Below are positions 7,150 through 23,170 of a stretch of 64,000 nucleotides of DNA, piece after piece (position 1 is the stretch's first letter; each line of letters starts with the position of its first letter). The notes under the pieces are model-generated. The model saw only the letters and a list, made by a program, of their open reading frames with translations, ran no database searches and was not told the origin of the DNA. The translations under genes and the position numbers were made by a program. The DNA lies in sequence record MT446416.1, one strand, 5' to 3'.

Positions 7150-7240
7150 TTAGATACACCTATGCACCCGGTGGGCTAGTTTTTGTCTATGCGTATATAA
7201 TAGCAAAGGGACTTACCGGAGTCAATCCCTTTTTTATTCT
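7150..7240 (-). ncRNA. Small-RNA-like unit, family 1 (RCCC-AYN-GGGUGC), copy 1
   Basis: TTGACT(7220-25)-17-TATTAT(7197-7202), then GCCCACCGGGTGCATAGGTGTATCTA; no RBS or ORF. Confidence 0.5.
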
Positions 7241-7242
7241 TT

Positions 7243-7500
7243 TTATGAAATATCTTCGATGTAGTCGGCCCATTTCATTTTTTCAGTACTGTCAATGGCT
7301 ACCGGATTATTTGGATCAAACCATTCACCATTACCGCAATACATACCCACGGCTACGGTTTTATAGCCATCCTGTGCCGTATTCCATGACATTGCACGAT
7401 AGATATGGCCTTTAATTGGTGTTAGTACTGGTAACGTTTTATGGTCTTCTACGTAGGCCATAGCTTGAGGATTTACCCGATATTGTGTGAACTGTTCCAT
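7243..7500 (-). CDS. Hypothetical early protein
   Basis: ORF with its own promoter. Confidence 0.75.
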   Translation of the reverse strand: MEQFTQYRVNPQAMAYVEDHKTLPVLTPIKGHIYRAMSWNTAQDGYKTVAVGMYCGNGEWFDPNNPVAIDSTEKMKWADYIEDIS

Positions 7501-7576
7501 TATGTTTCCCCTTGTAGTTAGTAAAGTTATTACATCAGTACTATCAAGCTATGTCAATAGTACTGAAATAAAACTT

Positions 7577-7801
7577 TTAGATTAGATTATTGATACCTTC
7601 GATGGTAGACTCGCTTTCTTCTTTCTCCCATTGTCGGTAGTACTTCCATGTTTCATGATATGTGGCGATTAGTTCATCTTTTTGATCCTGGTTACATGCC
7701 AGTACTGAATCACGGTGAGCGGTGTTATAGATAGAATCGAATGATTTCTTCTCTTCTGCCAGGTTAGCTACTTCCCGCATCAGTTCATCAAAGTTAGCCA
7801 T
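7577..7801 (-). CDS. Hypothetical acidic early protein
   Basis: ORF with an AGGAG RBS. Confidence 0.75.
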   Translation of the reverse strand: MANFDELMREVANLAEEKKSFDSIYNTAHRDSVLACNQDQKDELIATYHETWKYYRQWEKEESESTIEGINNLI

Positions 7802-7868
7802 TTTAATACTCCTTTTAGTGGGGGAGGATATCTCCCCCTATGCAAAACATTATACGCTTTATTCAGTA

Positions 7869-8132
7869 CTATGCAAGTACTTTTTTCATATAAACATTAA
7901 ATTCTACACCGCCGTAACCTTCCACGATGATATGTTTTGCGTTATCACGCTTGCACATAGTGAAACCGTTGTTGATATGTTCTGCATTTTCCAGGGCTAC
8001 ATCACCGATAGCGGCACATACAGCACTAATAACAGTATTCCGCAAAGTACTGGTATCATTAGCGGTCATAGTAGTTTGCAGTACTACGTTGTCATATACG
8101 TGTGCATTGATAGTGATTTCAATAGCGTTCAT
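7869..8132 (-). CDS. Hypothetical early protein
   Basis: Start corrected to MNAIEIT (AGGAG RBS). Confidence 0.75.
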   Translation of the reverse strand: MNAIEITINAHVYDNVVLQTTMTANDTSTLRNTVISAVCAAIGDVALENAEHINNGFTMCKRDNAKHIIVEGYGGVEFNVYMKKVLA

Positions 8133-8253
8133 GGTGTATCTCCTGGACTTGAGGGGAAACCATTTCCCCCTCTCGATGTAAAACATTATACGCGAATTGC
8201 GATAGTATGCAAGTACTTTTTTAAAATAGTTTTCAGTACTGAATACTTATATA

Positions 8254-8340
8254 ATAGATACATTTATGCACCCGGTGGGTTAGATTGTTTTCATGCATAT
8301 ATAATAGCAAAGGGACTGACCTGAGTCAATCCATTTTTTT
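8254..8340 (-). ncRNA. Small-RNA-like unit, family 1, copy 2
   Basis: TTGACT...TATTAT promoter, then ACCCACCGGGTGCATAAATGTATCTA; no ORF. Confidence 0.5.
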
Positions 8341-8348
8341 AATCTTTT

Positions 8349-8933
8349 TTATCGTGTTATAGTTACGGCTTTTACATCACGCTTTTTATAGTACTGATTC
8401 CAGATATTGCGGGTTAAACCGTAATCAAGTACTTTAATCAAGCCGTTACGATCCTGGCCGATATTCTGTTTTCTGATATCTCTTATAGTTAGTGTTGATA
8501 AGGTATCATCAACGTGTTGTAGTGCATCAGCAAAGCGGTGCTGGCGTTCAATGGTATTACGTTTAATATTGCACTTTAATTCGTTGCACGCGTTAACGTG
8601 CTTTACGCTGCCTTTGCTTGCAGTACTCAAACGATCCATAACAATAAACATATTATCAGGATCGCTTAAATGCATATGCACCTTAGCAAAGTACTGTTTC
8701 ATTTGAGGGCGGTCATAATCTAAAAAATTCCATACCTTACATTCAGTTTCATTTTGTTCTACACCCGCATCACAATTCGCGACCTTGATCACTAACCGAT
8801 CATTTAAAGCGAATACTATACGGGAAGAACCCGCACCGATGATCTCAAGACCAGCTAACCGACAAGCTGAAAGGATCTCTTTGTTGGTTTCCATTTCTGA
8901 CAGTGTACGGATAAATTTAGTATAATTACGCAT
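8349..8933 (-). CDS. Protein kinase-like (ePK/APH fold) protein
   Basis: IGAGSSRIV glycine loop, VIK lysine, NETE helix-C Glu, DIRKQN catalytic loop and LDYG; start MRNYTK. Confidence 0.75.
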   Translation of the reverse strand: MRNYTKFIRTLSEMETNKEILSACRLAGLEIIGAGSSRIVFALNDRLVIKVANCDAGVEQNETECKVWNFLDYDRPQMKQYFAKVHMHLSDPDNMFIVMDRLSTASKGSVKHVNACNELKCNIKRNTIERQHRFADALQHVDDTLSTLTIRDIRKQNIGQDRNGLIKVLDYGLTRNIWNQYYKKRDVKAVTITR

Positions 8934-8980
8934 TGCATTTACTCCTTGAATTGATGAAACTATATTACAGTACTTTACTA

Positions 8981-9208
8981 TCAATGGCAACTACTTTTTT
9001 TAACATTAACGGCGTGGATCACTTCCTTAGTGTTTTTAGTACTGAATACTTTTGCCGCTCCTTGTTCGACCGTGATGCGATAGCGACCATTAACATCAAC
9101 CATATTAATAAAGTCCGGCGTGCTGAATGGTGTTGTTTTACATTTCAGTACGGTTAACAGTTCCACCAGCGATGTAGTTTATTTGATACGTTTTTCTAAA
9201 GTAATCAT
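8981..9208 (-). pseudogene. Early gene interrupted by an in-frame TAA at codon 10
   Basis: ATG at 9208 with a GGGG RBS reads MITLEKRIK*TTSLVELL..., TAA at 9179-9181, in frame with track ORF 8981..9166. Confidence 0.55.
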
Positions 9209-9262
9209 TTTGTTTTCCCCCGTGTTGGTATATATACATAGTACTAAAACATTTGAGTACTG

Positions 9263-9517
9263 TCAACGTGAAATTCTTTTAATAGCAGTATTATACTGCT
9301 GGTGCTCATACAAACTAATTTTACCAGTACTCTCGATAACGATTCTATTGTTAGTGTCTACATCGATAACACGCAGTTTACCGTTGCTTAACTTCCTAGG
9401 TAATATGTTACCATTAATAAACTCATTAGCAAGCTGTACGGCCTTTGTGATGATTCTCTGAGGGGCTTTATAGTGTACCCGCAAGATATTATCTTTAGAT
9501 AGTTGTACCTTAATCAT
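9263..9517 (-). CDS. Hypothetical early protein
   Basis: ORF with RBS. Confidence 0.7.
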   Translation of the reverse strand: MIKVQLSKDNILRVHYKAPQRIITKAVQLANEFINGNILPRKLSNGKLRVIDVDTNNRIVIESTGKISLYEHQQYNTAIKRISR

Positions 9518-9579
9518 TTTAGTTTATCCTATAAAAAAAGCGGGAACTGATCCCGCCGTGTTGTTAGTACTGCTAGGTA

Positions 9580-9984
9580 TTAGATAACCTGTCGGCGTTT
9601 ACTGAATACAGTAACACTGTTTCCCTTGCGGTCGTGGCGGATCTCTCGTTGGTTGCGAATCAGTACACTTGGACGCTTCAAGTTAGCCAGATGATCCGCG
9701 TGAGTCCATGCATTCGAATTTACGGAAACTTTAATATCAGAACCCGCGACGAATTCATCTTGAGCGTTAAGAATTGCCGCCAGTTCTTCAGCTTGTTTTT
9801 GTTCTGCTGCTGTCAGTACTGGCTCAGGTGAATTCACAATATCAGAGATTTCTTTGAACTGTACGGCCCAGCGTTGGCCTTTCGGTGCATCTTTGCCCAT
9901 GTCTTTAAATAGCTCACCTTCCTCGCGTGCAACAATACGGGCAGCTTCACGGGTAGCGTAGAATTTAGTAATCATGGTATACAT
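9580..9984 (-). CDS. Hypothetical early protein, paralog of 21493..21756
   Basis: Shared TRE.AR..AR, FKDMG, RWAV and HDRKGN.VTV. Confidence 0.8.
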   Translation of the reverse strand: MYTMITKFYATREAARIVAREEGELFKDMGKDAPKGQRWAVQFKEISDIVNSPEPVLTAAEQKQAEELAAILNAQDEFVAGSDIKVSVNSNAWTHADHLANLKRPSVLIRNQREIRHDRKGNSVTVFSKRRQVI

Positions 9985-10070
9985 CCTATTAGTTAAGTTA
10001 GTACTACAAGCGAGAGTCTATTATAAAGTACTATCTGTGTAATGTCAAATAGTACTTTAAATGGATTCTA

Positions 10071-10394
10071 TTACATGTCTTTCTTACGTTTTACATCGTA
10101 GTAGCGAACTGTTATTTCTTTGTTAATCTCTTTTTCGATGCGGTGAATAACTTTTTCTTTCGGGTTGAAACCTATAACGGTTTCTTTAATGATCTCCAAA
10201 CCAGTGTATTCGCCTTGCGTACCGTAACCGTATGTAAAGGTTTCGTGTCCCAGGTCTTCCCAGCGGTCGCCAATTAACGCAGACACGTAGCAAGAGTGGT
10301 AAGTATTGCCGTTCCGATCAGTCCAGCGATTAACTTTAATGTCAAAGGAGGTTACAATTTTCAGTTCTACTTTCTGGGTAAGGATCATAGCCAT
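10071..10394 (-). CDS. Hypothetical early protein, paralog of 16639..16983
   Basis: Shared RW...GNTY.S, F.YGYG and DVKRKKD. Confidence 0.8.
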   Translation of the reverse strand: MAMILTQKVELKIVTSFDIKVNRWTDRNGNTYHSCYVSALIGDRWEDLGHETFTYGYGTQGEYTGLEIIKETVIGFNPKEKVIHRIEKEINKEITVRYYDVKRKKDM

Positions 10395-10481
10395 TTTTAT
10401 TTCTCTCTTTTAGTTAGGAGGGGAACCATTCCCCTCACTTGATGTAATCTATTATACAGTACTAAGATACTTTGTCAATAC

Positions 10482-10757
10482 TTAAGTATTGTAAATGTCG
10501 TGAATAGTGATAAAGTTTTTACGACCGTAAACCTGTAAATCGGTATCAATGTAGTGTTTATCTAGTACATCCTCGACGCTTAACGCGGTGTCGTGGATAT
10601 CTTCGTAGAATTGAGGATCTACAATCTTGCTTAAGTCATCCGGTGTTAACTTATCGTTAAGCCATTGCACCGCCTGGATATCTGCTTCACGTTTCCAGTC
10701 TTGCAGGTTAGTAGTCAGTACTTGCTCGATTTCGTTAGCTGTCAGTAGAATCCGCAT
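10482..10757 (-). CDS. Hypothetical acidic early protein
   Basis: ORF with an AAGGA RBS and its own promoter. Confidence 0.75.
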   Translation of the reverse strand: MRILLTANEIEQVLTTNLQDWKREADIQAVQWLNDKLTPDDLSKIVDPQFYEDIHDTALSVEDVLDKHYIDTDLQVYGRKNFITIHDIYNT

Positions 10758-10825
10758 TTTAATGTTTCCTTATCAGTGGTTGATGTAAGTATTATACTCG
10801 TTTACTTTCTATTGTCAATCTTTTT

Positions 10826-10901
10826 ATCAGGGGAGTTTTTCGTATGTCTTACTCCTGGACTACTTAACGGGGTTACTTGTTTCGTTCCCCCGTCCTGATG
10901 T
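10826..10901 (-). ncRNA. Structured RNA, family 2 (14-nt-loop hairpin), copy 1
   Basis: Promoter-driven, no ORF; GGAGT-AAGACATACGAAAA-ACTCC hairpin at 10832-10855; near-identical to 20819-20895. Confidence 0.55.
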
Positions 10902-10975
10902 AAAACATTATACTTGATTTTAAGTACAATGCAAGTACTTTTTAAAAATAGTTTTCAGTACTAGCCACCAGCAAA

Positions 10976-11062
10976 TAATAGATACATTTATGCACCCTGT
11001 GGGCTGATTTGTTTCTATGCGTATATAATAGCAAAGGGACTTACCGGAGTCAATCCCTTTTT
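10976..11062 (-). ncRNA. Small-RNA-like unit, family 1, copy 3
   Basis: Promoter, then GCCCACAGGGTGCATAAATGTATCTA; Chi site just downstream (10965). Confidence 0.5.
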
Positions 11063-11071
11063 TAATTATTT

Positions 11072-11221
11072 TTAAACTTGTTTTGGGTTGCGATATGTGA
11101 TAGCGTTCGGGTACATTTGTTTAATGTTATTCCATGCCTGGTTAACATTATAACCACTTGAGCGAATCAGTTGGTTACTACCGACACCTTGAAACACTAC
11201 TTCGAATAAGAATTCTTTCAT
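11072..11221 (-). CDS. Small hypothetical protein (49 aa)
   Basis: Hand translation MKEFLFEVVFQG...; ATGA-coupled to the upstream gene. Confidence 0.65.
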   Translation of the reverse strand: MKEFLFEVVFQGVGSNQLIRSSGYNVNQAWNNIKQMYPNAITYRNPKQV

Positions 11222-11391
11222 GCTTTCACCTCGCGATCTGCTTTACCTTTACGCCACGCTGTTGCTAATTGTTCGCGTTGCCATAAGTCGAGTGATACGT
11301 AAAGTTTTGCATTATCACCCTTCGGATATTCGCCAGTAGTACCAATCCGATAAAACAGATCTTTCAGTACTGTCAATTCTACCTGGATCAT
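11218..11391 (-). CDS. Small hypothetical early protein
   Basis: Start corrected to MIQVELT. Confidence 0.7.
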   Translation of the reverse strand: MIQVELTVLKDLFYRIGTTGEYPKGDNAKLYVSLDLWQREQLATAWRKGKADREVKA

Positions 11392-11477
11392 TATACTTTC
11401 CTCTTTGTTAGGAGGGGAACTATTCCCCTCTCGATATAAAACATTATACACTTTATTCAGTACTGTGCAAGTACTTT

Positions 11478-11690
11478 TTAATCTTTCAGCCAATGATCCT
11501 GAATGAATTTTTCACCAAATCCCTGTTTCATGGATTCTAACAGGCGTTCACGGTGAGCGTTGGCGAATTGCTCCGTACTATGCGTTACACCTGGTTGATA
11601 TCTGGATTCACCATTGGGGGCGATGTATTGCACATCCCACGGTTTAGCGTTAGTATCAGACCATTTACGAACGATTAGTTGACCTTGCAT
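11478..11690 (-). CDS. Hypothetical early protein
   Basis: ORF with its own promoter module. Confidence 0.75.
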   Translation of the reverse strand: MQGQLIVRKWSDTNAKPWDVQYIAPNGESRYQPGVTHSTEQFANAHRERLLESMKQGFGEKFIQDHWLKD

Positions 11691-11776
11691 TTTTCTTTCC
11701 TCTTAGTGGGGAGAATCATTTCTCCCCTTCATGTAAACTATTATACAGTACTATAATCTATTGTCCAGTACTTTTT

Positions 11777-11965
11777 TTACAGTTTATGAATCAATTCTTT
11801 ATCTAAGCGATAGCGTACATTATTAATAGTAACGGCATTGTTTTTAATGCTACGCTGTACTGGTCCACCAGCAATAACAAACGTTGCCTTATTACCCCGA
11901 ACAATGATAGCACTTCCTGGATTGCTGTATTCATCTTGTACTAAAATACTTGATAAGTTTTCCAT
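11777..11965 (-). CDS. Hypothetical early protein
   Basis: ORF with its own promoter module. Confidence 0.75.
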   Translation of the reverse strand: MENLSSILVQDEYSNPGSAIIVRGNKATFVIAGGPVQRSIKNNAVTINNVRYRLDKELIHKL

Positions 11966-12052
11966 TTTTATTTCCTCTTAGTAGGGGAAGATGTTTCCCC
12001 TTGATGTAATACAGTATACACTATCTTTCAGTACTGTCAATACTTTTTAGTA

Positions 12053-12409
12053 TTACGATAAAATCATGATAGGATATTCACTATCGATCAGTACTTCGAA
12101 TCCAAAACCTTCGTACCATTCTTTAAGATTAAAGGCGTTATCTTCTCCCGTATCGCATTCTAAAATGATACAATCGGAATCATCAGCGGCATCAATAAAG
12201 GCATTCATTAATTCGTTACCTTCACCATTGCCCCGACTATCAGGATCAACATAAAGAGAATCAATAAACGCTACACGGTCATAATCAAGATCCGGTGCAA
12301 TGATTCCACGTTTTTCAAACCAGTACTGCAATTGTGCTACTTTGCCCTGTACTTGATAGCCAGTGATCTCGCCATTGTCAGTAGTACGCGTGATATGTTG
12401 TATTCCCAT
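12053..12409 (-). CDS. GNAT-family acetyltransferase
   Basis: Motif A: IDSLYVDPDSRGNGEGNELM; C-terminal WYEGFGF. Confidence 0.85.
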   Translation of the reverse strand: MGIQHITRTTDNGEITGYQVQGKVAQLQYWFEKRGIIAPDLDYDRVAFIDSLYVDPDSRGNGEGNELMNAFIDAADDSDCIILECDTGEDNAFNLKEWYEGFGFEVLIDSEYPIMILS

Positions 12410-12472
12410 GATTTCTATCCTCAGTTAAGATATAAAATATTATACACTATCTTTCAGTACTGTCAATACTTT

Positions 12473-12730
12473 TTATCTCATAGATCTATGCCAACAATTA
12501 CGCGGGGGACGTTTAAAAGTACTATCATGATCCTCCTGGCAAGTTATGCAGTACATGCACCCTACAACGGCCTGGCGTCGATTCTCAGGGATTAAATCAC
12601 CGCAATCATGACAATGTGTTAGTGATTCTCTTTGTGCGTTAATTTGCTTTCTAGCGTGGTTTACGGCGGCCTGAATCACTGCGTTAATCTCGTCTTGTTC
12701 GGCCCCGTCTTTCGCGAATCCTACTGCCAT
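12473..12730 (-). CDS. ybiI: DksA/TraR C4 zinc-finger protein (YbiI-like)
   Basis: MAVGFAKD..., ESLTHCHDCGDLIPENRRQA...CMYCITCQE; closely follows the YbiI/TraR pattern. Confidence 0.85.
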   Translation of the reverse strand: MAVGFAKDGAEQDEINAVIQAAVNHARKQINAQRESLTHCHDCGDLIPENRRQAVVGCMYCITCQEDHDSTFKRPPRNCWHRSMR

Positions 12731-13065
12731 TATTTTAACCTCATTATAAAAATACTATATTACTGTAATGCTACAATAATACTACTAGTACTAATCTTAT
12801 TCAAACCACATGATACTACATATCCACCAGCATTACCACGGATAGTAACGCCTTTGTACTGTCTATATAAATTCAACTGCGTTTATTGCCTTTGATCAAG
12901 AATTGATCAGAATTATACGCCTTATGCTAAATTGATCCAGTACTTTTTGATCATTTATTGATCAATATTATACAGTTACATTTGTGCACCCTATGGGTTG
13001 GTGACGTTCTCGTCTTGATGTAAGTATTATGCCAGTACTGGATGATATTGTCAATAGATTATTTT
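12731..13065 (-). other. Non-coding AT-rich stretch with a family-1 unit, five TTGATC sites and a Chi site
   Basis: GATC at 12894, 12905, 12934, 12949 and 12960; ACCCATAGGGTGCAC motif at ~12985-12999 behind TTGACA-17-CATAAT; CCACCAGC at 12824. Confidence 0.6.
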
Positions 13066-13256
13066 AACTTTTTTCTGTCATTGATTAATGCTTTCAGTAC
13101 TATACTAATGATTTGCAATGATTCATCAATGACTATAAAATTATTATCTTTCATTAGATGATAGTTACCATTGATATTATATTCTAATGAGTACTGTTTA
13201 CGTTTAATTTTTGATAATGTTTCTATTTGTTTTTGTACTGATTTCATGCTAATCAT
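13059..13256 (-). CDS. Hypothetical protein
   Basis: ORF track. Confidence 0.6.
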   Translation of the reverse strand: MISMKSVQKQIETLSKIKRKQYSLEYNINGNYHLMKDNNFIVIDESLQIISIVLKALINDRKKLK

Positions 13257-13361
13257 TGTTAAACGTCCTGTAACGCATTCTAACGATATAAACGGTTTAG
13301 TACTGGCATTGTATAGGGTAAATGATTAAAGCCCACCAGCGTTAACTAGTGGGCTATAATC

Positions 13362-13505
13362 TTACATCTTGCGGATAATCTTAACAGTATCTTTCACCGA
13401 TTTACCGTCTTGCTGGCATTGCTCGATCATCGCGTATTGTTCTGCGGTCAGATCCTCGCCAGTTTTTGCCAGTACTGCATCGATGAATGAATCCAGTGCG
13501 ATCAT
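13362..13505 (-). CDS. Small hypothetical protein (47 aa)
   Basis: Hand translation MIALDSFIDAVLAKTGE...; own promoter; GCCCAC hairpin terminator at ~13331-13354. Confidence 0.65.
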   Translation of the reverse strand: MIALDSFIDAVLAKTGEDLTAEQYAMIEQCQQDGKSVKDTVKIIRKM

Positions 13506-13595
13506 TTTATTTCTCTCTTAGGTTAAGTTAACTACTGTTTATAAAACTTATTATACAGTACTATCAATCTATGTCAATAGTACTGGTAATATATT

Positions 13596-13847
13596 TTATA
13601 CGGGCTGTACCGCCAGTGTATTATCTGTTATAACCTGGTACATAACTTTTACAGTACTGTATGCTTCTTTGATGCTTAGCCCTTGAACTACAGGGACTTC
13701 ATCAGCACCACCAGGAAGGGTACGCGAGATAACCAGTTTATCATTTTCTGAATGTACACAGTAACGATAGGTCATCTGGCGACGGGCTAACGCATCATTC
13801 AAGTACTGTAAGTGGCGTTCTACGTTCTCGCGAGTAATACGGGTCAT
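13596..13847 (-). CDS. Hypothetical early protein
   Basis: Start corrected to MTRITRE (AAGGA RBS). Confidence 0.75.
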   Translation of the reverse strand: MTRITRENVERHLQYLNDALARRQMTYRYCVHSENDKLVISRTLPGGADEVPVVQGLSIKEAYSTVKVMYQVITDNTLAVQPV

Positions 13848-16558: not shown

Positions 16559-16638
16559 TTTACTATCCTCTTAATTTGATTTAATTTCTTTCCCCTATGC
16601 AGACACTATATCAAAGTATCTGCATAAAGTAAAGCTAA

Positions 16639-16983
16639 TTAAAGATCTTTTTTGCGTTTAACATCAGTTACCGAACTGTAAACAGTGATATTATTGTCAC
16701 GGCAAAAACGGGAAAGATAAGAACCGCGTAAAAACTCTTTACCTTCCATATTAATAACCTTGCTAAATTCTTCCATTGCTACAGTGTCAAAGTGATCCCC
16801 ATAGCCATATTGGAACGGCACGTTTACTACTTCAATAAATTCGCCATTGATTTCAACATCTACCGTTAAAGAGAAATAAGTATTACCATAAGACGCCTGG
16901 AACCAACGCCGGGCTGCAATATGTACAACTTCAACAGAAGACAGGTTGATGTTTTGTGCTGTGATAGTGTTGATGATAGCCAT
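16639..16983 (-). CDS. Hypothetical early protein, paralog of 10071..10394
   Basis: GNTYFS, FQYGYG, DVKRKKDL. Confidence 0.8.
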   Translation of the reverse strand: MAIINTITAQNINLSSVEVVHIAARRWFQASYGNTYFSLTVDVEINGEFIEVVNVPFQYGYGDHFDTVAMEEFSKVINMEGKEFLRGSYLSRFCRDNNITVYSSVTDVKRKKDL

Positions 16984-17065
16984 TTTTTGTTTCCTCTTAG
17001 TGGGGGAACCATTCCCCTTGATGTAATGTATTATACTTTATCTGATTTACTTTGCAAGTACTTTT

Positions 17066-17293
17066 TTAATTTAATTCATCCAGGCAAAGGATACGTTCTA
17101 CACCTAAATCAGTTAAACTAATAGACGGCACTTGATAGGTTTCAATGTATGCTACACTTGCCCACTGACCGAACTCATTAACGGCCCAGGTATCCATTGC
17201 AAAATGCAATTCCGCACCTGCCTTGTTGGTAATGACTGCAACTACTTGTTCGTTGCCAGTAGTACCAGATACGCGAGTAATGATAATAGCCAT
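17066..17293 (-). CDS. Hypothetical early protein
   Basis: Start corrected to MAIIITR. Confidence 0.75.
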   Translation of the reverse strand: MAIIITRVSGTTGNEQVVAVITNKAGAELHFAMDTWAVNEFGQWASVAYIETYQVPSISLTDLGVERILCLDELN

Positions 17294-17539
17294 TGTTTTG
17301 ATTCCTTTTATTTGGAGGGGAAACTGTTTCCCCCCCTCTCGATGTAAAACATTATACGCTAATCTCTTTATAGTGCAAGTACTTTTTATTACTTTTTGCA
17401 AAATACTTTAAACGCTCTCAATCGCTCTATAACAACATTAACGCCACCAGCTAGGGAAATGCATCAGATATTCAGTTTAATGCGTTAGAATCGTTTCTAG
17501 GCGGTGCTGGTGGCCTGGTAAACGGTAAACACAAAAAAT

Positions 17540-17566
17540 CCCACTGTTTAAGGTGGGCTAGTGATT
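17540..17566 (-). terminator. Hairpin terminator; identical 27-bp copy at 18831-18857
   Basis: CCCACTGTTTAAGGTGGGCTAGTGATT, with a U-tract on the - strand. Confidence 0.75.
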
Positions 17567-17580
17567 CAGTACTTTAATTG

Positions 17581-18063
17581 TTATGCTTCAACTTTGCGAT
17601 GAGCTTCGATCCATTCCTCGCGAGTCAATCCGCTTTCTTTGATAGCATCCAGTACTACCGAAATGCAGTTACCACGCACCGGAATCAGATATTCTTCCCC
17701 GTTATCAAGTACTACCGCTACACGTTCTTGAATCCATTTTTTAGGCTTAGACTCCGGCTTATCTTCCCCATACTTAACCGCCAGGGCTTTTTGTGCCATC
17801 TCGGTAACTACTTCCATATCCAGCCCATCTACTACCGCCTGGATACTTTCAATTGTTGCTTGTAGTTCTGCTTCACGGGCCGCCTTCGCTGCTTCAATCT
17901 CTGCCGCTTTATTTGCTTGTAGTTCTTTCGCAGTACTGTAAGCGATGTTAAAATTATTGCGAACCGCTTTCATGGTATCGTTATCCAGTTCAGCCAGGAT
18001 CTCTGCCGCTACGTTAGTTTCATTTGCTACCAGTGCTTTGATGAATGATTTGATGTTAGCCAT
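17581..18063 (-). CDS. Divergent H-NS/StpA-like protein
   Basis: By-eye alignment to E. coli H-NS: NIKSFIKA vs NIRTLRA; VVDGLD...LAVKYG vs IADGID...LAAVKSG; VLDNGE...RGNCISVVLDAIKESGLTREEW vs VDENGE...[22 protein letters not shown]. Confidence 0.6.
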   Translation of the reverse strand: MANIKSFIKALVANETNVAAEILAELDNDTMKAVRNNFNIAYSTAKELQANKAAEIEAAKAAREAELQATIESIQAVVDGLDMEVVTEMAQKALAVKYGEDKPESKPKKWIQERVAVVLDNGEEYLIPVRGNCISVVLDAIKESGLTREEWIEAHRKVEA

Positions 18064-18127
18064 TAGATAAATCCTCAATTAAAGTTTAGTTTACGTTCAT
18101 TAGTGTATCAAAGTTTAATCGACGTGT

Positions 18128-18181
18128 CCAGTTTTTCGTTCGACTTACTGGCGGTCTACTTAGTGTTCCCCGTCTTGATGT
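18128..18181 (-). promoter_or_regulatory. Family-2 14-nt-loop hairpin in the 5' leader of the H-NS-like gene
   Basis: CCAGT-AAGTCGAACGAAAA-ACTGG at 18128-18151; promoter TTGACA(18209-14)...TAGAAT(18187-92). Confidence 0.6.
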
Positions 18182-18214
18182 AATACATTCTACGCCTTTT
18201 TGCGGTAATGTCAA

Positions 18215-18775
18215 CTATCTTTTTGAATATTTTTTAATGTATCTCATAATCGCTGGCGGTGTAGTATTATACCTTTCAGCTAGTATAATTGAGTTAGCAT
18301 CATGTGAATATGGTTTATACAGTTGTATAACTTCGTTAATCTCTTTTTCAGTTAGTTTTGTCCTAACATGCCTTATACCTTCACTCTCATACTTCACTAT
18401 TTTTTTAATAGGCGTTGCGTCGTCATGTATTCCGGTATCGTGTGCGTGTATTATGTTTTCCTTTCCGGTTGACCATTCCAAATTACTGTAATGATTATTA
18501 CTTTTATTTCTATCCTTATGATTAACCTGGACTTTCTTTCTTTTTGTTTTTTGTGCCCATTCTATTTGTGCAGGTGTCGGAGGGGGTAGATAGTTGGATG
18601 CAACCAATCTTTGAACATACTCAAAATGTTTTGATTTGTCTTCTCTTACAAGCGTTAATCTATGATACCCATCAGGGCGAATTGTTGGAGAAAGAATATT
18701 ACTACCATAACGCCTAACATCCCCATACTCACTAATTTCATAAAGGGGATTCTCTTTTAATTGTTTCCATTCCAT
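18215..18775 (-). mobile_element. NUMOD4/HNH homing endonuclease-like gene
   Basis: W..L...P.YEISEYG N-terminus; VQRLVA..; VNHKDRNKSNNHYSNLEW HNH motif. Confidence 0.85.
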
Positions 18776-18856
18776 TGATTTGATCCTTTTAGTTTCTCCT
18801 TTGTATTATATCACACAAAAACAAAAAAAGCCCACTGTTTAAGGTGGGCTAGTGAT

Positions 18857-19156
18857 TTATAAACAGTTAATTACTCCTGTGTGCGTTACTTTCTCAGTAT
18901 CCATTACAGTGACCGAACCGCGTTTAGTACTGGCATCATAATAAATTGTTGTGCTACCTTTCGCATCTTCTTCATGGAACGGGCCGTTTTTAAATGCTTC
19001 TGGCTGGATCTCTAGATCCTTTAAAACAATATCGCCAGTTCTTTCTTCGGTCATTGCAACAGTGCACTGAATGAATTTTTCACTACTTACATCTAACGAC
19101 GCATTAACAGCGAAAGAGGAAACAGATAAAGCCAGGGAGATGATTGCTACTTTCAT
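18857..19156 (-). CDS. Secreted/periplasmic protein
   Basis: MKVAIISLALSVSSFAVNA signal peptide; two Cys; start corrected. Confidence 0.75.
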   Translation of the reverse strand: MKVAIISLALSVSSFAVNASLDVSSEKFIQCTVAMTEERTGDIVLKDLEIQPEAFKNGPFHEEDAKGSTTIYYDASTKRGSVTVMDTEKVTHTGVINCL

Positions 19157-19264
19157 TTGATTATCCTTAGTTACCAGGGGAACCGTTCCCCCTATGTAAA
19201 ACATTATACGCGTTTAAAAACTATTATCAAGTACTTTAATATAAAAGTATTTGAAAAATAATTG

Positions 19265-19392
19265 TTGACAACTGCATCCAGTACTGGCATAATACCTACA
19301 TAAAGACAAAACAGTCTCCAACCCACCGGGTGCATAGATCCGTCTATTAAATGATTCAGTACTGCAAAATAAAGGGGATCAATTGATCCCCT
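19265..19392 (+). ncRNA. Small-RNA-like unit, family 1, + strand
   Basis: TTGACA(19265)-17-CATAAT, motif ACCCACCGGGTGCATAG at 19321, then the GGGGATC-AATT-GATCCCC hairpin at 19374-19391. Confidence 0.55.
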
Positions 19393-19397
19393 CTGTA

Positions 19398-19619
19398 TTA
19401 CTTAGTAAGGTATAAACAGAAGTCACCTTTATTTGCTACGCCGCCAGTGTAACGCGATGAATAGTTAGAAATATCTTGTACTTCTGCTATTACCAGTGTA
19501 TCATCATTCATTTCGTCGCAGAAGCAAACGGCTGGATCTTTTACGCCGATATTGTCGGCATGTTCCCGCATAGATTTAACCAGTGCTTCCAGTTGAGAAA
19601 GAGTAGTGATATTAGCCAT
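19398..19619 (-). CDS. Hypothetical early protein
   Basis: Start corrected to MANITTL. Confidence 0.75.
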   Translation of the reverse strand: MANITTLSQLEALVKSMREHADNIGVKDPAVCFCDEMNDDTLVIAEVQDISNYSSRYTGGVANKGDFCLYLTK

Positions 19620-19809
19620 TGTATTTTCCTCATTACCAGGGAGAACCATTTCTCCCCTCTATGTAAACTATTATACAGTACTGGAAACTAATTGCAAGTA
19701 CTTAATGGTAAGATCCGCAACGGTTGCAGTAGTTTTATTTGTTCGATCATGATGCTTACTCCTGGTTAAAGGCGGGAACCATTCCCCGCCATTGTCACAG
19801 TACTGAATA

Positions 19810-20049
19810 TTACATTCCAACCATTGCAGCACGGATCGCAGTAGTGCTATACTTGAATCCGTCCGGCGTTGTAGTAGTACCGTTGGCTTTTAATCTGCGG
19901 TACATACATTCCGCTGCAATATCTTTCGTTTTACTTTGAGCGATGCAATTTTGAGCAATCCGGTACAATGATTCATCGTTATTGATCCAAAGGCTTACAT
20001 TCCAATGAGTTTTGTTTTTGTGTCCGTTGTAAGTTTTAGTACTAGCCAT
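19810..20049 (-). CDS. Hypothetical early protein, paralog of 21838..22065
   Basis: NGHKN..HWNVSLWINNDESLY shared. Confidence 0.8.
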   Translation of the reverse strand: MASTKTYNGHKNKTHWNVSLWINNDESLYRIAQNCIAQSKTKDIAAECMYRRLKANGTTTTPDGFKYSTTAIRAAMVGM

Positions 20050-20138
20050 TTTTTAATCCTCTTATATAGTGGGGAACTATTCCCCACCTGATGTAAAGTA
20101 TTATACGCTTTTAAACTTAGTTTGCAAGTACTTTTTAA

Positions 20139-20750
20139 TTAATATGCGATTGATTCTACTACGCCATCAATAACATTGAATTGATATTCGTTACCCTCAA
20201 TCAGTGCCGTAATGTTTTCAGTAGTGAATTGATCCTTATATGCATTCTCTAAATCACGGTAAAACTTGCGTGACAATTCACGAATAGTATCAGTTAGTAG
20301 TTTCTCAAGCTCATTAACTAACGTTTCTTGTTTTGAGGTTAAATCAGTGTAAGCCGATTCAATGTACCCGCTTACAGTGTTCTCATGCGAGTAATGGGAG
20401 TGAGATCGCTTTACACTCATCGCCAAATCATCTTCATTCAGCAGGTGACGGATTGAGCGATACTTAGTTAATGCTCTTACCTTGCGTAAAAACTTCACTG
20501 CGTCAACGTGGTCAGTACTGATTGATGCACCGTCACCCTGGGACCAAAAACCACTGAATTGTATTTCAGCGTCATTAATGCCATATTCTGGTAGTACTGT
20601 TTCTTTATAGTATTCAATTTCACTTTCAGAAAAATAATCGTCGTTTGTGTTTTTTTCACGTTCCCGAACCAGTTCGATAGCTGACGTTTTTTGTTCTGCG
20701 TTCAATTCAGAAAAATCCATAACATAAGTAGTAGTAGTGATAGTTTTCAT
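20139..20750 (-). CDS. Conserved acidic phage/ICE-type hypothetical protein
   Basis: FSELNAE..A and FSGFWSQGDGA motifs; function unvalidated. Confidence 0.75.
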   Translation of the reverse strand: MKTITTTTYVMDFSELNAEQKTSAIELVREREKNTNDDYFSESEIEYYKETVLPEYGINDAEIQFSGFWSQGDGASISTDHVDAVKFLRKVRALTKYRSIRHLLNEDDLAMSVKRSHSHYSHENTVSGYIESAYTDLTSKQETLVNELEKLLTDTIRELSRKFYRDLENAYKDQFTTENITALIEGNEYQFNVIDGVVESIAY

Positions 20751-20818
20751 TTTGTAACCCTCATTCAGTAGTTGATGTAAGTATTATACGCTTTTAAAAA
20801 CAATTGTCAAACTATTTT

Positions 20819-20895
20819 ATCAGGGGAGTTTTTCGTATGCCTTACTCCTGGGCTACTCAACGGGGAGTTACTTATTTCGTTCCCCGTCCTGATGT
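20819..20895 (-). ncRNA. Structured RNA, family 2, second standalone copy
   Basis: GGAGT-AAGGCATACGAAAA-ACTCC at 20825-20848, an ACGGGGA/TCCCCGT stem and an ATCAGG/CCTGAT closing stem; no ORF. Confidence 0.55.
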
Positions 20896-20971
20896 AATAC
20901 ATTATACGCCGTTAAACATAGTATGCAAGTACTTTTTAAAATAGTTTTCAGTACTGAATAGTAAAAAGGTA

Positions 20972-21145
20972 TTGACAGCACTATCCAGTACTGGCATAAT
21001 ATACCCCATGACAACAGCTAACCCACCGGGTGCACAATTGTAACTGTACTAAACTACTTTTTCTATAGATACACTCCCGCACCCCGTGGGCCAAATTGTT
21101 CGTTTCAATAGATACATTATGCCAGTACTGACAAAATAAGTCAAT
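20972..21145. ncRNA. Convergent pair of family-1 units
   Basis: + strand: TTGACA(20972)-17-CATAAT, motif at 21021. - strand: TTGACT(~21139-44)-17-CATAAT, motif GCCCACGGGGTGCGGGAGTGTATCTA at ~21066-21091. Confidence 0.5.
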
Positions 21146-21174
21146 ACTGGCAATTGTAAAGATTTGTAAACTAC

Positions 21175-21405
21175 TTATACTGCAATCGCGTCCAGGCTAT
21201 AATAATAATAAGTGCCGTATTGGTGTACTTTATTACCTTTTATTTCAGTACTGAATGAATCCGAACGATTAGCATATGATGTTAATTTAAAGTACTTTGC
21301 TTTACTAATACGTTGCCATACACCGCAGATCCGCTGTAAGTAAGTAGTTTTATTAGTGGTAGTATCTTTTACGGTTTTAACTTCGGTCATATACATATTA
21401 GCCAT
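21175..21405 (-). CDS. Hypothetical early protein
   Basis: Start corrected to MANMYMT. Confidence 0.75.
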   Translation of the reverse strand: MANMYMTEVKTVKDTTTNKTTYLQRICGVWQRISKAKYFKLTSYANRSDSFSTEIKGNKVHQYGTYYYYSLDAIAV

Positions 21406-21492
21406 TTTTTTAATCCTCTTATGTAGTGGGGAAGTATTCCCCATCTGATATAAAGTATTATACGCTTTTAAACTTAGTATGCAAGTACTTTT

Positions 21493-21756
21493 TTATAGTA
21501 CTGCAATCTTTTTAGTACGGTACACGGTAACGCGATTGCCCTTGCGGTCGTGCTTTATTTCTACTACTCGCCGCGATACACTATCAGGACTTTTTAACGC
21601 CGCCAACCAGTACTGTAAAGATCTGGCTTTACTTTGCTTTACTACCGCCCAACGTTTACCACGTTCCGATTGTCCGCCCATATCTTTAAACGTCGCCCCG
21701 TCCAGACGTGCGGCGATCCGTGCTTGTTCACGCGTCACAAAGTACATAATATTCAT
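21493..21756 (-). CDS. Hypothetical early protein, paralog of 9580..9984
   Basis: Shared motifs as noted for 9580..9984. Confidence 0.8.
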   Translation of the reverse strand: MNIMYFVTREQARIAARLDGATFKDMGGQSERGKRWAVVKQSKARSLQYWLAALKSPDSVSRRVVEIKHDRKGNRVTVYRTKKIAVL

Positions 21757-21837
21757 GCTGTTACCCCATCGTTGACGTATAAAAGAAATCTATTATAAAG
21801 TACTATCACCGTGCAATAGTACTTTAAATATATTCTA

Positions 21838-22065
21838 TTACATTCCAACCATCGCCGCACGCACGCTTGATTTGCTATAACGTGCCCCATCAGGCGTGTG
21901 AGTACCTAAAAGGCGTAACATCCGCTCAACCGCTTTATCTCGCGTGTTGGTGCTTTTAATACTTTCCAGGGCCAATTGGTACAGTGATTCATCGTTATTG
22001 ATCCAAAGGCTTACATTCCAATGGTTGTAGTTTTTATGGCCGTTGAAAGTTTTAGTAGTAGTCAT
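21838..22065 (-). CDS. Hypothetical early protein, paralog of 19810..20049
   Basis: WNVSLWINNDESLY. Confidence 0.8.
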   Translation of the reverse strand: MTTTKTFNGHKNYNHWNVSLWINNDESLYQLALESIKSTNTRDKAVERMLRLLGTHTPDGARYSKSSVRAAMVGM

Positions 22066-22158
22066 TTTTAATTCCTCTTAAGTGCAGCGGGAACCATTCC
22101 CGCTCTCGATGTAATACATTATACGCTATTTGATAGTACTGTCAAACTAATTTTTAAC

Positions 22159-22521
22159 TTATTCGTAAATTTTGCCACTGTCAGCCCATACCAGGAAACG
22201 AGGCATATTATCCCATGCATCTTGTTTTAAATTTAAACCGTGTAATACTTCTGTACTTTCCATTCCTGGTACTGGTTTACTATACACCGCGAACATTTCA
22301 CCCATATACTGATAAGCCATCGTTAAATCACTGGCGATCATCTTATGGATCATCGCATCAAGCATCACGGTAGCGGCGTATTGTTCACGCTTAAGCGGCA
22401 ACATTGCAATAAGTCCACGATAAGCTGAAATGTGAATTTTTACCGTTTCTGCCGGAAGATCTTTCATCTCGTCGCGGAAGTTAACCAGGTTAGCAATAAT
22501 TTTATTGATTTGTGTCGCCAT
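22159..22521 (-). CDS. Hypothetical protein, first gene of the early block
   Basis: ORF with promoter module at 22546-22610. Confidence 0.8.
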   Translation of the reverse strand: MATQINKIIANLVNFRDEMKDLPAETVKIHISAYRGLIAMLPLKREQYAATVMLDAMIHKMIASDLTMAYQYMGEMFAVYSKPVPGMESTEVLHGLNLKQDAWDNMPRFLVWADSGKIYE

Positions 22522-22660
22522 CGTTTTTAATCTCTCTTAAAGTGCAGCGGGAACCATTCCCGCTCTCGATGTAATACATTATACGCCGTTAAACATAGTA
22601 TGCAAGTACTTTCTACAAATACTTTTAAAATAGTTTTCTTTCTATATAGGGGAACTATCT

Positions 22661-22712
22661 TTCAGTACTATCTTTCAGTACTATCATTCAGTACTATCAT
22701 TCAGTACTGAAT
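22661..22712. repeat. 13-bp tandem repeat x4 (TTCAGTACTATCW)
   Basis: Units start at 22661, 22674, 22687 and 22700. Confidence 0.9.
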
Positions 22713-22871
22713 CAATCCACTAAATCATCCCTATACCCCGTAAAACGGCCTCAGACGCATTCTAACGCATTAATACACCTAAGCTATACATTTGCACCAT
22801 TCCAATCATTCCAGGGCTTTACGGGCCGTTGAAACGCGTTAAATTATTTTCAATTATTTTGTTTTTAGGTA

Positions 22872-23170
22872 TTGACTTGATCCTGAAAAAGCGTATAATT
22901 ACTACATAAGCCGGACACAAGGCACTAACCCACAGGGTGCGGAATTACGCCCAAAATTCAAGATATAAAAAAAGGATACACTCCCGCACCCTAGCAGGTC
23001 AACGCACTTTCTCAGTACTGAAATATAGTACCATAGTACTTGCCAGGATAGCAAGCAAATTAATTAAAACTTTTTTGCTTCCAGGGTATTGCTTTATTTT
23101 TTCAGTACTGTATAATAGTTTCATCAAGTCGAGAAAGACTCAAGCCCACCGGGTGCATAGTTACGCCCAA
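22872..23170 (+). ncRNA. Two + strand family-1 units and one degenerate - strand copy
   Basis: Motifs at 22928 (ACCCACAGGGTGC) and 23144 (GCCCACCGGGTGCA), each behind a TATAAT promoter; degenerate copy at ~22976-22999. Confidence 0.5.

What the first reader, a model, noticed from the sequence alone, without database searches (positions are those of the whole stretch)
7150..23170. Multi-copy family of promoter-driven, ORF-less small-RNA-like units (family 1)
Seen: 11 copies of RCCC-AYN-GGGU-GC(A/G)-N4-UGUA at ~7160, 8270, 10995, 12990, 15250 and 21085 (-), 19321, 21021, 22928 and 23144 (+), plus a degenerate one at 22990 (-). The ten clear copies lie about 15-30 nt after a strong sigma70 promoter with no RBS or ORF, in either orientation relative to flanking genes; two converge at 21.0-21.1 kb. 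The first loop varies (ACC/ACA/ACG/AUA) while the stem is kept, and its G-U pairs work only on the promoter-defined strand, which argues for RNA-level selection. The 5' part (CUAGCCCAC) also matches the 5' arm of the GCCCAC terminators at 13.3, 17.5 and 18.8 kb. Inference: an undescribed early phage sRNA system (protein decoy, anti-defence RNA or trans-antiterminator), or promoter-primed R-loop origins coupled to nearby Chi sites.
Basis: partly seen in the sequence, partly recalled or inferred. Interest (0 to 1): 0.82.

Follow-up and report, generated by a model that had tools for sequence, protein, structure and literature searches.

The report
Repeated early leader RNA, jumbo phage
A giant E. 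coli phage carries ten copies of a short, folded RNA element placed right after strong host-type promoters in its terminal repeat; the element is shared by related giant phages, matches no described RNA family, and its job is still unknown.

Summary
The window is Escherichia phage TH47, an Asteriusvirus (121Q/PBECO4/RaK2-like jumbo phage). Ten copies of the core CCCAYNGGGTGC lie at 7.1-23.2 kb, and an eleventh is only a half copy. Each starts 21-29 nt after the -10 of a sigma70-type promoter. All ten fall inside the inferred direct terminal repeat (window 5737-24245), and the rest of the 352-kb record has none.

A covariance model finds 104 copies in related phages of Escherichia, Klebsiella, Salmonella, Pectobacterium, Cronobacter and Serratia. 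95% of them have a promoter directly upstream. A first hairpin at about +3 covaries strongly. The GC hairpin is nearly invariant but has two compensated copies and tolerates 3- or 4-nt loops, so the element works as RNA. Rfam has no match.

"ORF-less" is only partly right. Six window copies are 5' leaders that run on through a second promoter into genes. About 40% of all copies point against the genes, either ending about 95 nt on at a terminator (window 19.3 kb) or facing a sense copy.

Best reading: an autonomous protein-binding RNA module, acting as a tag or decoy, made at DNA entry. The function is inferred. R-loop origins, Chi coupling and a leader peptide are not supported.

The parts
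5737..24245 (.). Inferred direct terminal repeat (DTR) of the phage. It contains all ten copies. Genes in it run on the minus strand.
   Evidence: The ends of the annotated 21,525-bp DTR of Escherichia phage vB_Ec-M-J map to window 24245 and about 5737. The G17 record starts at the same point. An Asteriusvirus DTR of 20,993 bp was confirmed by restriction digests in PMC13070987.
7143..7225 (-). Unit 1: promoter 7225-7197, leader 7191-7143, core 7175-7164. Sense leader without the H1 stem. A second promoter (7072-7044) and a gene starting at 6990 follow.
   Evidence: 46.8 bits
8247..8329 (-). Unit 2: promoter 8329-8301 with an embedded terminator-like hairpin, leader 8295-8247. Sense leader without the H1 stem. 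A second promoter follows, then a hairpin at 8151-8172, an SD and an ATG at about 8132.
   Evidence: (49.1 bits)
10971..11053 (-). Unit 3: promoter 11053-11025, leader 11019-10971. Sense. Two further promoters follow before the gene at 10757.
   Evidence: (42.3 bits)
12965..13054 (-). Unit 4: promoter 13054-13026, leader 13018-12965 with H1 GACG/CGUC. Sense. About 250 nt precede the next gene.
   Evidence: 36.4 bits
15223..15310 (-). Unit 5: promoter 15310-15282, leader 15276-15223. Sense. A second promoter (15188-15161), a hairpin, an SD and an ATG at 15108 follow.
   Evidence: (64.7 bits)
19265..19403 (+). Unit 6: stand-alone unit antisense to the genes. Promoter 19265-19293, leader 19301-19354, then a bidirectional terminator hairpin at 19374-19391 with its tail. 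The predicted RNA is about 95-100 nt with no ORF.
   Evidence: (65.8 bits)
20972..21056 (+). Unit 7: the antisense member of the convergent pair. Promoter 20972-21000, leader 21007-21056.
   Evidence: (20.7 bits)
21058..21144 (-). Unit 8: the sense member of the convergent pair. Promoter 21144-21116, leader 21112-21058. The predicted start sites of units 7 and 8 are about 102 bp apart, and the cores start 57 nt apart.
   Evidence: 29.6 bits
22872..22961 (+). Unit 9: promoter 22872-22899, leader 22906-22961. It points towards the DTR terminus and the plus-strand genes beyond 24.2 kb.
   Evidence: 44.9 bits
22974..22992 (-). Half copy: only the 3' part of the leader, as a hairpin followed by a T-run. 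It sits where a convergent partner of unit 9 would lie.
   Evidence: (not a model hit)
23089..23177 (+). Unit 10: promoter 23089-23116, leader 23124-23177. A further promoter follows at 23213-23241.
   Evidence: (59.4 bits)

Best explanation
What it is (shown): a family of roughly 50-55-nt structured RNA modules encoded directly downstream of a dedicated class of strong sigma70-type promoters. It is confined to the long direct terminal repeat of RaK2/121Q-like jumbo phages, with 10-12 copies per repeat.

From the predicted start (the A of a conserved CAT) the module has four parts:
- An A-rich segment, usually presented as the loop of a 3-5-bp hairpin (H1) whose stem sequence is free but covaries.
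- A 4-nt linker.
- A near-invariant hairpin H2 (CCC/GGG stem closed by R-U, loop of 3 or 4 nt) followed by an almost invariant UGC.
- A semi-conserved tail. It can form a small third hairpin (UGCR-N4-UGUA in most copies), or alternatively pair with the GGGUG of H2.

How it most likely works (inferred): the RNA module itself is the product. It is made in bulk by host RNA polymerase as soon as the terminal repeat enters the cell. It appears in three forms: as free ~95-105-nt RNAs that end at intrinsic terminators, as the 5' domain of early mRNAs, and from face-to-face promoter pairs.

The invariant H2-UGC element would be the docking site for a partner conserved across Enterobacterales or across these phages, so the RNA would act as a tag or a titrating decoy. 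The near-5'-terminal H1 would add protection of the 5' end.

The partner is not identified. Hfq, the RNase E degradosome and RNA polymerase are candidates from general knowledge only.
For: Reality and promoter coupling:
- establish the copies and their promoters in the window.
- 99 of 104 model hits in 24 loci have a promoter scoring at least 9/12 directly upstream, against 3.6% of random positions.

RNA-level structure:
- H1 is 90.6% paired. All 4 pairs show double changes, with 3-5 pair types each.
- Its covariation score is 0.361 against 0.129 in shuffles (0/500 reach it) and at most 0.048 when partners are slid.
- An alignment-free test of the 5' segment gives a mean z of -1.85.
- H2 is 99% paired. 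The closing pair is A-U in 49 and G-U in 44 sequences. Two copies carry a compensated C-G to U-A change, and eight of 96 distinct copies carry 4-nt loops, which a spaced DNA site would not tolerate.

Function independent of a downstream ORF:
- 41 of 104 copies point against the local gene direction.
- 14 of 25 solo antisense copies end at a GC hairpin plus U-rich tail 91-105 nt from the start, against 4 of 47 solo sense copies.
- 16 convergent pairs are conserved across genera, with start sites 102-128 bp apart.
- In the window, the other strong promoters are all on the gene strand: 10 perfect TTGACA-16/17-TATAAT sites and 11 AAAAAGTACTTGCA-type sites. Leader promoters split 6 sense to 4 antisense.
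- Sense copies are followed by a second strong promoter with its own leader and SD, so the leader promoter is not needed simply to express the gene.

Distribution:
- The copies lie only in the DTR. In CBB all 12 lie inside the annotated 22,456-bp repeat.
- The element is conserved in phages of six host genera and absent from bacterial genomes beyond chance.
- In the distant relative PA5oct the DTR is the highly transcribed early region and yields abundant ORF-less RNAs (PMC7318152).
Against: - No transcript, 5' end, 3' end or binding partner has been observed. Start sites are inferred from promoter geometry.
- H2's stem is almost invariant, so its pairing rests on two compensated copies, the loop-length variation and the R-U closing pair.
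- The third hairpin and the alternative helix are supported only by one-sided, wobble-compatible changes (97.7% compatible), and thermodynamic prediction is mixed (mean P of H2 0.59, of the alternative 0.17).
- The terminators after antisense copies also serve the upstream gene on the other strand, so their presence may reflect location rather than selection for a short RNA.
- In convergent pairs a read-through transcript would bury the motif in a 12-15-bp stem formed with the complement of its partner.
- About a quarter of the copies lack the H1 stem.
- The 96 distinct sequences include many orthologues, so the counts overstate independent events.
- The model alignment is fitted to the structure.
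Confidence: 0.4

Rival explanations
1. Cis-acting co-transcriptional element. The nascent two-hairpin leader binds the RNA polymerase that makes it and changes elongation, either as HK022 put-like antitermination or anti-Rho protection of the long untranslated leaders, or as a programmed promoter-proximal pause.
For: The position is fixed relative to the start, with H1 at about +3 and H2 at about +21 in all copies. Sense transcripts have 130-250-nt untranslated leaders and must cross promoter-embedded terminator hairpins. A near-invariant U (89/96), followed by G in 59/96, lies 9-10 nt after the GGG, and a -10-like hexamer occupies fixed columns at about +47. From general knowledge, both resemble pause-inducing features.
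Against: Antisense copies run straight into strong intrinsic terminators 40-50 nt after the leader, which an antiterminating element would defeat. No terminator lies between the leader and the next promoter in sense copies. The leader is about half the size of put RNA. No Rfam or other model links them. The H2 hairpin ends too close to the putative pause point for a classical hairpin-stabilised pause.
Confidence: 0.2
2. Generic promoter cassette. The leader is just an optimised initial transcribed region plus a 5'-end stabiliser hairpin. It is multi-copy and found in both orientations because promoter-terminator cassettes duplicate and shuffle, as T4-type PeSLs do. It has no specific partner.
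For: Four window promoters carry a terminator-like hairpin over the -35, as PeSLs do (PMC4122927). The units flank small ORFan genes in a plastic region with 33-100% coverage between relatives. H1 lies 2-5 nt from the predicted 5' end, the geometry known for 5' stabiliser hairpins.
Against: Ten or more positions are invariant across phages of six host genera, while the promoters, H1 stems and flanks have diverged. The convergent pairs keep their spacing and their place near the repeat end in TH47, G17, 121Q, CBB and GAP32. Other strong promoters in the same region are never antisense.
Confidence: 0.2
3. DNA-level operator. CCCAYNGGGTGC at +15 to +32 is the binding site of a phage or host repressor that shuts these promoters off.
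For: The site sits within or just beyond the polymerase footprint. It is near-invariant with a degenerate centre. Shut-off of the earliest promoters is common in phages (general knowledge).
Against: H1 covaries as a hairpin on the transcribed strand. The spacing between the CCC and GGG halves varies by one base in 8 of 96 distinct copies, and two copies carry symmetric compensated changes. The R-U closing pair works only on the promoter-defined strand. Orientation relative to the promoter never varies.
Confidence: 0.07
4. One reading: promoter-primed R-loop replication origins coupled to Chi sites.
For: Promoters without nearby ORFs exist, and Chi octamers lie 45-150 nt after three copies.
Against: There are 10-12 copies per repeat on both strands. 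There is no G-run or adjacent unwinding element. Five of the eight minus-strand Chi sites in the repeat are not next to a copy. Chi enrichment and orientation fit protection of the linear ends as a feature of the repeat itself.
Confidence: 0.03
5. Leader peptide or ribosome-loading site: the purine-rich GGGUG acts as an SD for a start codon in the tail.
For: Alignment columns 55-57 read ATG, GTG or TTG in 53 of 96 distinct copies, and C is almost absent from the first of these columns.
Against: 43 of 96 copies have no start codon there. ORF lengths range from 1 to 38 codons with no conserved peptide beyond what the nucleotide motif imposes. The putative SD is paired in H2.
Confidence: 0.02

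Closest known systems
PeSL cassettes (promoter-early stem-loop) of T4-type phages (PMC2839356, PMC4122927)
   Same: They are multi-copy composite regulatory cassettes built around near-consensus sigma70 early promoters with an adjoining terminator stem-loop. They flank small ORFan genes in plastic genome regions. Four window promoters have the hairpin over the -35.
   Different: The conserved part here is the transcribed leader downstream of the start, which PeSLs do not include. About 40% of the copies are antisense or convergent, and the element is confined to the terminal repeat.
HK022 put RNA (cis-acting antiterminator RNA)
   Same: It is a hairpin-containing nascent RNA element placed immediately after early promoters, present in more than one copy, and acting without an ORF.
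   Different: The leader here is about half the size. No sequence or model comparison was possible. Copies here are followed at once by terminators or by a facing promoter. Any effect on polymerase is untested.
5'-terminal stabiliser hairpins of bacterial and phage mRNAs (ompA-type)
   Same: H1 starts 2-5 nt from the predicted 5' end, and its sequence is free as long as it pairs.
   Different: A quarter of the copies lack H1. The invariant H2-UGC and the tail are not explained by 5'-end protection.
Abundant virus-encoded decoy or sponge RNAs (for example pseudo-ToxI repeats of phage PhiTE, RNA anti-CRISPRs, adenovirus VA RNA)
   Same: They are promoter-driven, non-coding, high-dosage RNAs with a conserved protein-binding hairpin, made early.
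   Different: No target is known here. The copies are dispersed over 16 kb rather than tandem. No likeness to a host repeat or antitoxin was tested.
DTR ncRNAs of Pseudomonas jumbo phage PA5oct (PMC7318152)
   Same: They are ORF-less, highly expressed transcripts from the long terminal repeat of a distantly related jumbo phage that also uses host RNA polymerase.
   Different: They are 236 and 451 nt long, single-copy, and do not contain this motif.

Membership tests
Any Rfam 15 family | A covariance-model match at the gathering score, or at least a suggestive E-value | tested here: not met
   There are no gathering-score hits in the 64-kb window. At E up to 5 over 6900-24200 there are only two unrelated weak hits, away from the copies.
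PeSL cassette (T4-type) | A terminator-like stem-loop directly joined to a sigma70-type early promoter | tested here: met
   Units 1, 2, 3 and 5 have a hairpin spanning the -35. G17's annotation calls these terminators. Units 4 and 6-10 do not.
PeSL cassette (T4-type) | The conserved part is the promoter and terminator themselves, with no conserved transcribed element | tested here: not met
   Here the promoters differ and the invariant part is transcribed, from +15 to about +50.
HK022 put-type antiterminator RNA | Two stem-loops in the nascent RNA just downstream of the promoter | tested here: inconclusive
   H1 and H2 fit the general layout.
HK022 put-type antiterminator RNA | Makes the transcribing polymerase resistant to downstream terminators | not testable with these tools
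   There is only indirect counter-evidence: antisense copies are followed by strong terminators.
Hfq-type small RNA gene | Own promoter, no ORF, intrinsic terminator with a U-tail, length about 50-300 nt | tested here: met
   This is met for the stand-alone subclass only: window 19265-19403, G17 14952+, RaK2 7702- and 14770-, Munch 11994- and 3301-. The window copy's U-tail is poor.
Hfq-type small RNA gene | Binding to Hfq, and a single-stranded seed that pairs with targets | not testable with these tools
   The A-rich 5' segment is compatible with binding. The invariant core is paired and has variable central positions, which argues against a seed.
Type III antitoxin-like repeat RNA (pseudo-ToxI type) | Tandem head-to-tail repeats processed into units | tested here: not met
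   The copies are 0.06-4 kb apart, on both strands, and each has its own promoter.
5' stabiliser hairpin | A stem-loop within a few nucleotides of the transcript's 5' end | tested here: inconclusive
   H1 begins 2-5 nt after the predicted +1 in about 70 of 96 copies. The start site is inferred, not mapped.

The most novel reading that the evidence does not exclude
The terminal repeat of RaK2/121Q-like jumbo phages is partly an RNA factory. In the first minutes of infection, twenty or so strong promoters (two repeat copies per genome) flood the cell with one conserved hairpin module. That module captures or disarms a conserved host RNA-binding factor, for example a decay, chaperone or defence component, while the same module marks the phage's own earliest mRNAs. 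This would be a bacterial-virus counterpart of the abundant decoy RNAs of animal viruses.
Probability: 0.2. Interest if true: 0.85.

Novelty: new variant of a known kind. Interest (0 to 1): 0.62.

Why it matters
Non-coding RNA biology of lytic phages is almost unexplored, and the early regions of jumbo phages are annotated as rows of hypothetical proteins. This work defines, by sequence and covariation, a structured RNA family that no database or genome paper consulted here describes. It is multi-copy, tied to the first DNA to enter the cell, and conserved across phages of at least six enterobacterial host genera.

Its layout is unusual: sense leaders, terminated antisense units and fixed-spacing convergent pairs. 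That gives concrete coordinates for transcript mapping and protein-RNA studies. It also corrects existing annotations, for example "terminators" that are really parts of promoters and intergenic regions that hold RNA genes.

If the module proves to be a decoy or tag, it would add an RNA layer to host takeover.

Tried and rejected
- Rfam at gathering score and at permissive thresholds: nothing. tRNA/tmRNA scan: nothing.
- An inner-tail helix (alignment columns 53-55 with 60-64): only 64% paired and no better than slid controls, so rejected.
- Leader peptide: rejected.
- Host homologues: a scan of 185,579 bacterial species genomes gave 27 hits, about the chance level. None were in Enterobacterales and model scores were at most 21.7 bits. 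A cluster in Sulfurovum is unrelated.
- A second viral-collection scan for the 4-nt-loop variant returned more than 120 stretches. All were chance except one further piece of a jumbo contig already known.
- The PA5oct DTR ncRNAs were fetched to look for the motif: absent.
- Pfam scan of 30 DTR ORFs for an RNA-binding partner: none seen.
- A test for a second promoter at a fixed distance, using a strict 10/12 rule, was only weakly above background (22/103 against 13.6%). The tandem promoters in the window rest on direct reading and on the AAAAAGTACTTGCA class.
- The genome papers on CBB, fEgEco12, PA5oct and PeSLs were read. None describes this leader.

The E. coli Chi octamer was used as a search pattern. 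In my reasoning only, I also typed recollected consensus strings for a lambda nut box, the CsrA SELEX site, the T7 class II pause signal and a T4 RegA site. The Chi counts should be read with that in mind.

Full report
**Identity of the window.** Window 7000-23500 is 100% identical to Escherichia virus TH47 (MT446416.1, 352,450 bp, genus Asteriusvirus). It is 88-93% identical in patches to 121Q, PBECO4, G17 and about 200 other records. The window has no tRNA genes and no Rfam family at gathering score.

**The observation.**
- The 12-nt core has ten perfect copies at the stated places and no others.
- Each copy lies 21-29 nt after the -10 hexamer of a sigma70-like promoter scoring 10-11 of 12, on the same strand.
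- The eleventh, "degenerate" copy at 22974-22992(-) is only the 3' half followed by a T-run, and the family model does not recognise it.
- The three terminators at 13349-, 17553- and 18844- do share up to 12 nt with the leader's linker and 5' arm. I have no explanation for this beyond common descent or chance.

**Anatomy.**
- Reading the ten regions on their own strand shows a conserved CAT. Its A lies about 7 nt after the -10, so it is the predicted start.
- Between that start and the core, most copies have a short hairpin whose stem differs from copy to copy but stays complementary. Examples are GACG/CGUC, GAC/GUC, GUC/GAC, GCC/GGC, GAG/CUC and AUUG/CAAU in the window, and GGAG/CUCC, GGAA/UUCC, AGCA/UGCU and ACCG/CGGU in relatives. 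The loop is A-rich.
- I built a covariance model from nine copies with equal loop length. I then searched the window and 23 loci from related phages: G17, 121Q, CBB, GAP32, RaK2, a Klebsiella phage assembly, Salmonella phage Munch, Serratia phage BF and uncultured jumbo contigs from IMG/VR. This gave 104 hits, 96 of them distinct.

**Structure evidence.**
- H1 is paired in 90.6% of cells, all four pairs show changes on both sides, and each has 3-5 pair types.
- Its covariation score is 0.361, against 0.129 +/- 0.008 in shuffles (0 of 500 reach it) and at most 0.048 when partners are slid.
- The alignment was fitted to the model, so I added an alignment-free check. The 5' segments fold better than their shuffles, with mean z of -1.85 and 64% below -1.5.
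- H2 is almost invariant. Its outer pair is A-U in 49 and G-U in 44 distinct sequences. Two copies have a compensated C-G to U-A change. Eight copies of 96 have a 4-nt loop instead of the usual 3.
- About a quarter of the copies, including window units 1, 2, 3 and 7, lack the H1 stem but keep an A-rich 14-15-nt 5' end.
- In the tail, five columns admit only pyrimidines or only purines, in exactly the pattern that allows pairing with the invariant GGGUG (97.7% compatible, against 30-68% when slid).
- In most copies the inner part of this forms a 4-bp hairpin (UGCR, four bases, UGUA) that can coexist with the CCC/GGG stem. The outer part would compete with H2.
- Folding predictions favour H2 (mean pair probability 0.59 against 0.17). 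The tail structure therefore stays open.

**Promoter coupling and distribution.**
- 99 of the 104 hits have a promoter scoring at least 9/12 in the right place, against 3.6% of random positions in the same loci.
- The ends of the annotated 21,525-bp direct terminal repeat of phage vB_Ec-M-J map to window 24245 and about 5737. All ten copies therefore lie in the inferred repeat.
- Scanning the other 288 kb of TH47 piece by piece found none.
- In CBB all 12 hits lie inside its annotated 22,456-bp repeat.
- Asteriusvirus repeats of about 21 kb have been confirmed by restriction mapping (PMC13070987).
- The element is not found in bacterial genomes beyond chance, nor in 689 kb of unrelated viral contigs that happen to contain a core variant.

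**Context: why "ORF-less" is only partly right.**
- The six minus-strand copies in the window point the same way as the genes.
- After the leader comes an A/U-rich stretch. A second strong promoter follows, often of the AAAAAGTACTTGCA type (11 copies in the repeat, all on the gene strand). Then come another hairpin, a Shine-Dalgarno sequence and a start codon 130-250 nt from the first start. These copies are 5' leaders of transcripts that continue into genes.
- Across all loci, however, 41 of 104 copies point against the genes.
- 32 copies form 16 face-to-face pairs with predicted starts 102-128 bp apart, and the spacing is conserved between genera (57 nt between cores in TH47, G17, CBB three times, and GAP32).
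- Of the 25 solo antisense copies, 14 run within 91-105 nt into a GC-rich hairpin with a U-rich tail. Only 4 of 47 solo sense copies do.
- Window unit 6 (19265-19403) is of this kind, as are its counterparts in G17, RaK2 (two) and Munch (two).
- In the window, all other strong promoters are on the gene strand: ten perfect matches and eleven of the second class. Leader promoters are 6 sense to 4 antisense. By my own hypergeometric arithmetic the chance of that split is about 0.007.

**Interpretation.**
- The covarying hairpin, the loop-length freedom and compensated changes of H2, the strand-specific G-U pair and the fixed orientation to the promoter all show selection at the RNA level.
- The antisense and terminated copies, and the redundancy with a second promoter in sense copies, suggest that the leader RNA, or its synthesis, is itself the product.
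- More than ten positions are invariant across phages of six host genera, while promoters, H1 stems and flanks have drifted. That suggests recognition by a conserved partner.
- I therefore favour an autonomous protein-binding RNA module (tag or decoy) made in bulk at DNA entry, at 0.4 confidence. The module's existence and structure I hold with much higher confidence than its function.
- The main rivals are a put-like or pause-type co-transcriptional element (0.2) and a generic promoter/5'-stabiliser cassette that spreads like T4 PeSLs (0.2).
- A DNA operator (0.07), R-loop origins (0.03) and a leader peptide (0.02) are disfavoured, for the reasons given under each rival.

**Surroundings.** The repeat encodes small proteins of mostly unknown function. 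Pfam hits include a ParE-like domain, a GNAT acetyltransferase, a DksA/TraR zinc finger, an HNH homing endonuclease, DUF7249 and a weak kinase-like match. No RNA-binding domain was seen. In the distantly related PA5oct, RNA-seq showed that the 39-kb repeat is highly transcribed early and yields two abundant ORF-less RNAs (PMC7318152). Those RNAs lack this motif.

**Prior description.** The CBB genome paper lists RpoD-like promoters with UP elements but no leader motif (PMC5259590). The fEgEco12 paper has no promoter analysis. Rfam 15 has no matching family. I found no earlier description in the library searched.

**Limits.**
- No transcript data exist for these phages in what I could search, and start sites are inferred.
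- Many of the 96 sequences are orthologues.
- The model alignment leans towards the model structure.
- The terminators after antisense copies also serve the neighbouring gene.

Noticed in passing
whole window; e.g. 23174-23183, 23689-23698, 23715-23724: The palindrome AGTACT occurs 266 times in 64 kb. 123 of these are in the repeat, against 5.9 expected from base composition and 28 for the next commonest 6-bp palindrome. It often appears as CAGTACTG, in promoter spacers and just after the leaders. It may be a DNA-level site for a regulator or a modification enzyme.
   Followed up: partly
window 7110, 9163, 10965, 11865, 12824, 13333, 17444, 23649 (minus strand); 17506, 23661 (plus strand): Chi octamers are strongly enriched in the terminal repeat: 8 on the minus strand and 2 on the plus strand, against 1 in the other 45 kb. 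By my own reasoning from how Chi is read (no tool checked it), they are oriented so that RecBCD entering from either physical end would meet one within about 0.6-1.4 kb.
   Followed up: partly
window 23339-23460: An array of about 14 units with an 8-bp period (variants of TAGCCGTN and CATCCAGN) lies about 0.8 kb from the inferred repeat terminus. It may be an iteron-like or end-associated element.
   Followed up: partly
window 6646-21493, minus strand (11 sites, e.g. 8208-8221, 15184-15197): There is a second promoter class with the shared upstream block AAAAAGTACTTGCA. It is found only on the gene strand. It is usually followed by a GC-rich hairpin just before the Shine-Dalgarno sequence (e.g. 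8151-8172, 15130-15148).
   Followed up: partly
window 10838-10901 and 20831-20895, minus strand: Two near-identical ~65-nt ORF-less segments sit between a second and a third tandem promoter. Each starts ACATCAGGACGGGG and ends ...CATACGAAA. They may be another structured RNA.
   Followed up: no
alignment A3 columns 64-71 (about +47 to +52 of each leader; e.g. window 8249-8254): A -10-like hexamer (T, A, T, A/T, A, T in 55-81% of copies per column, with the fourth column split A 50% / T 42%) sits at a fixed place after the leader. It could be a sigma-dependent pause element, a weak internal promoter, or just the A/T-rich tail.
   Followed up: no
window 9266-9517 (-), 12056-12409 (-), 12476-12730 (-), 18218-18775 (-): Among the small repeat-encoded proteins are a ParE-like toxin-domain protein, a GNAT acetyltransferase, a DksA/TraR-type zinc finger and an HNH/NUMOD4 homing endonuclease.
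   Followed up: partly
L001 (G17, MK327931.1) features at 1198-1219, 3950-3971, 7219-7240 and others: Several 'terminators' annotated in G17 by ARNold lie over the -35 regions of the leader promoters. The published annotation misses the promoters and the leader.
   Followed up: partly
L035, L037, L038, L040, L043, L047-L050 (Sulfurovum genomes): The 24-nt search pattern hits about ten Sulfurovum assemblies with low model scores. This is probably a conserved coding segment unrelated to the phage element.
   Followed up: no
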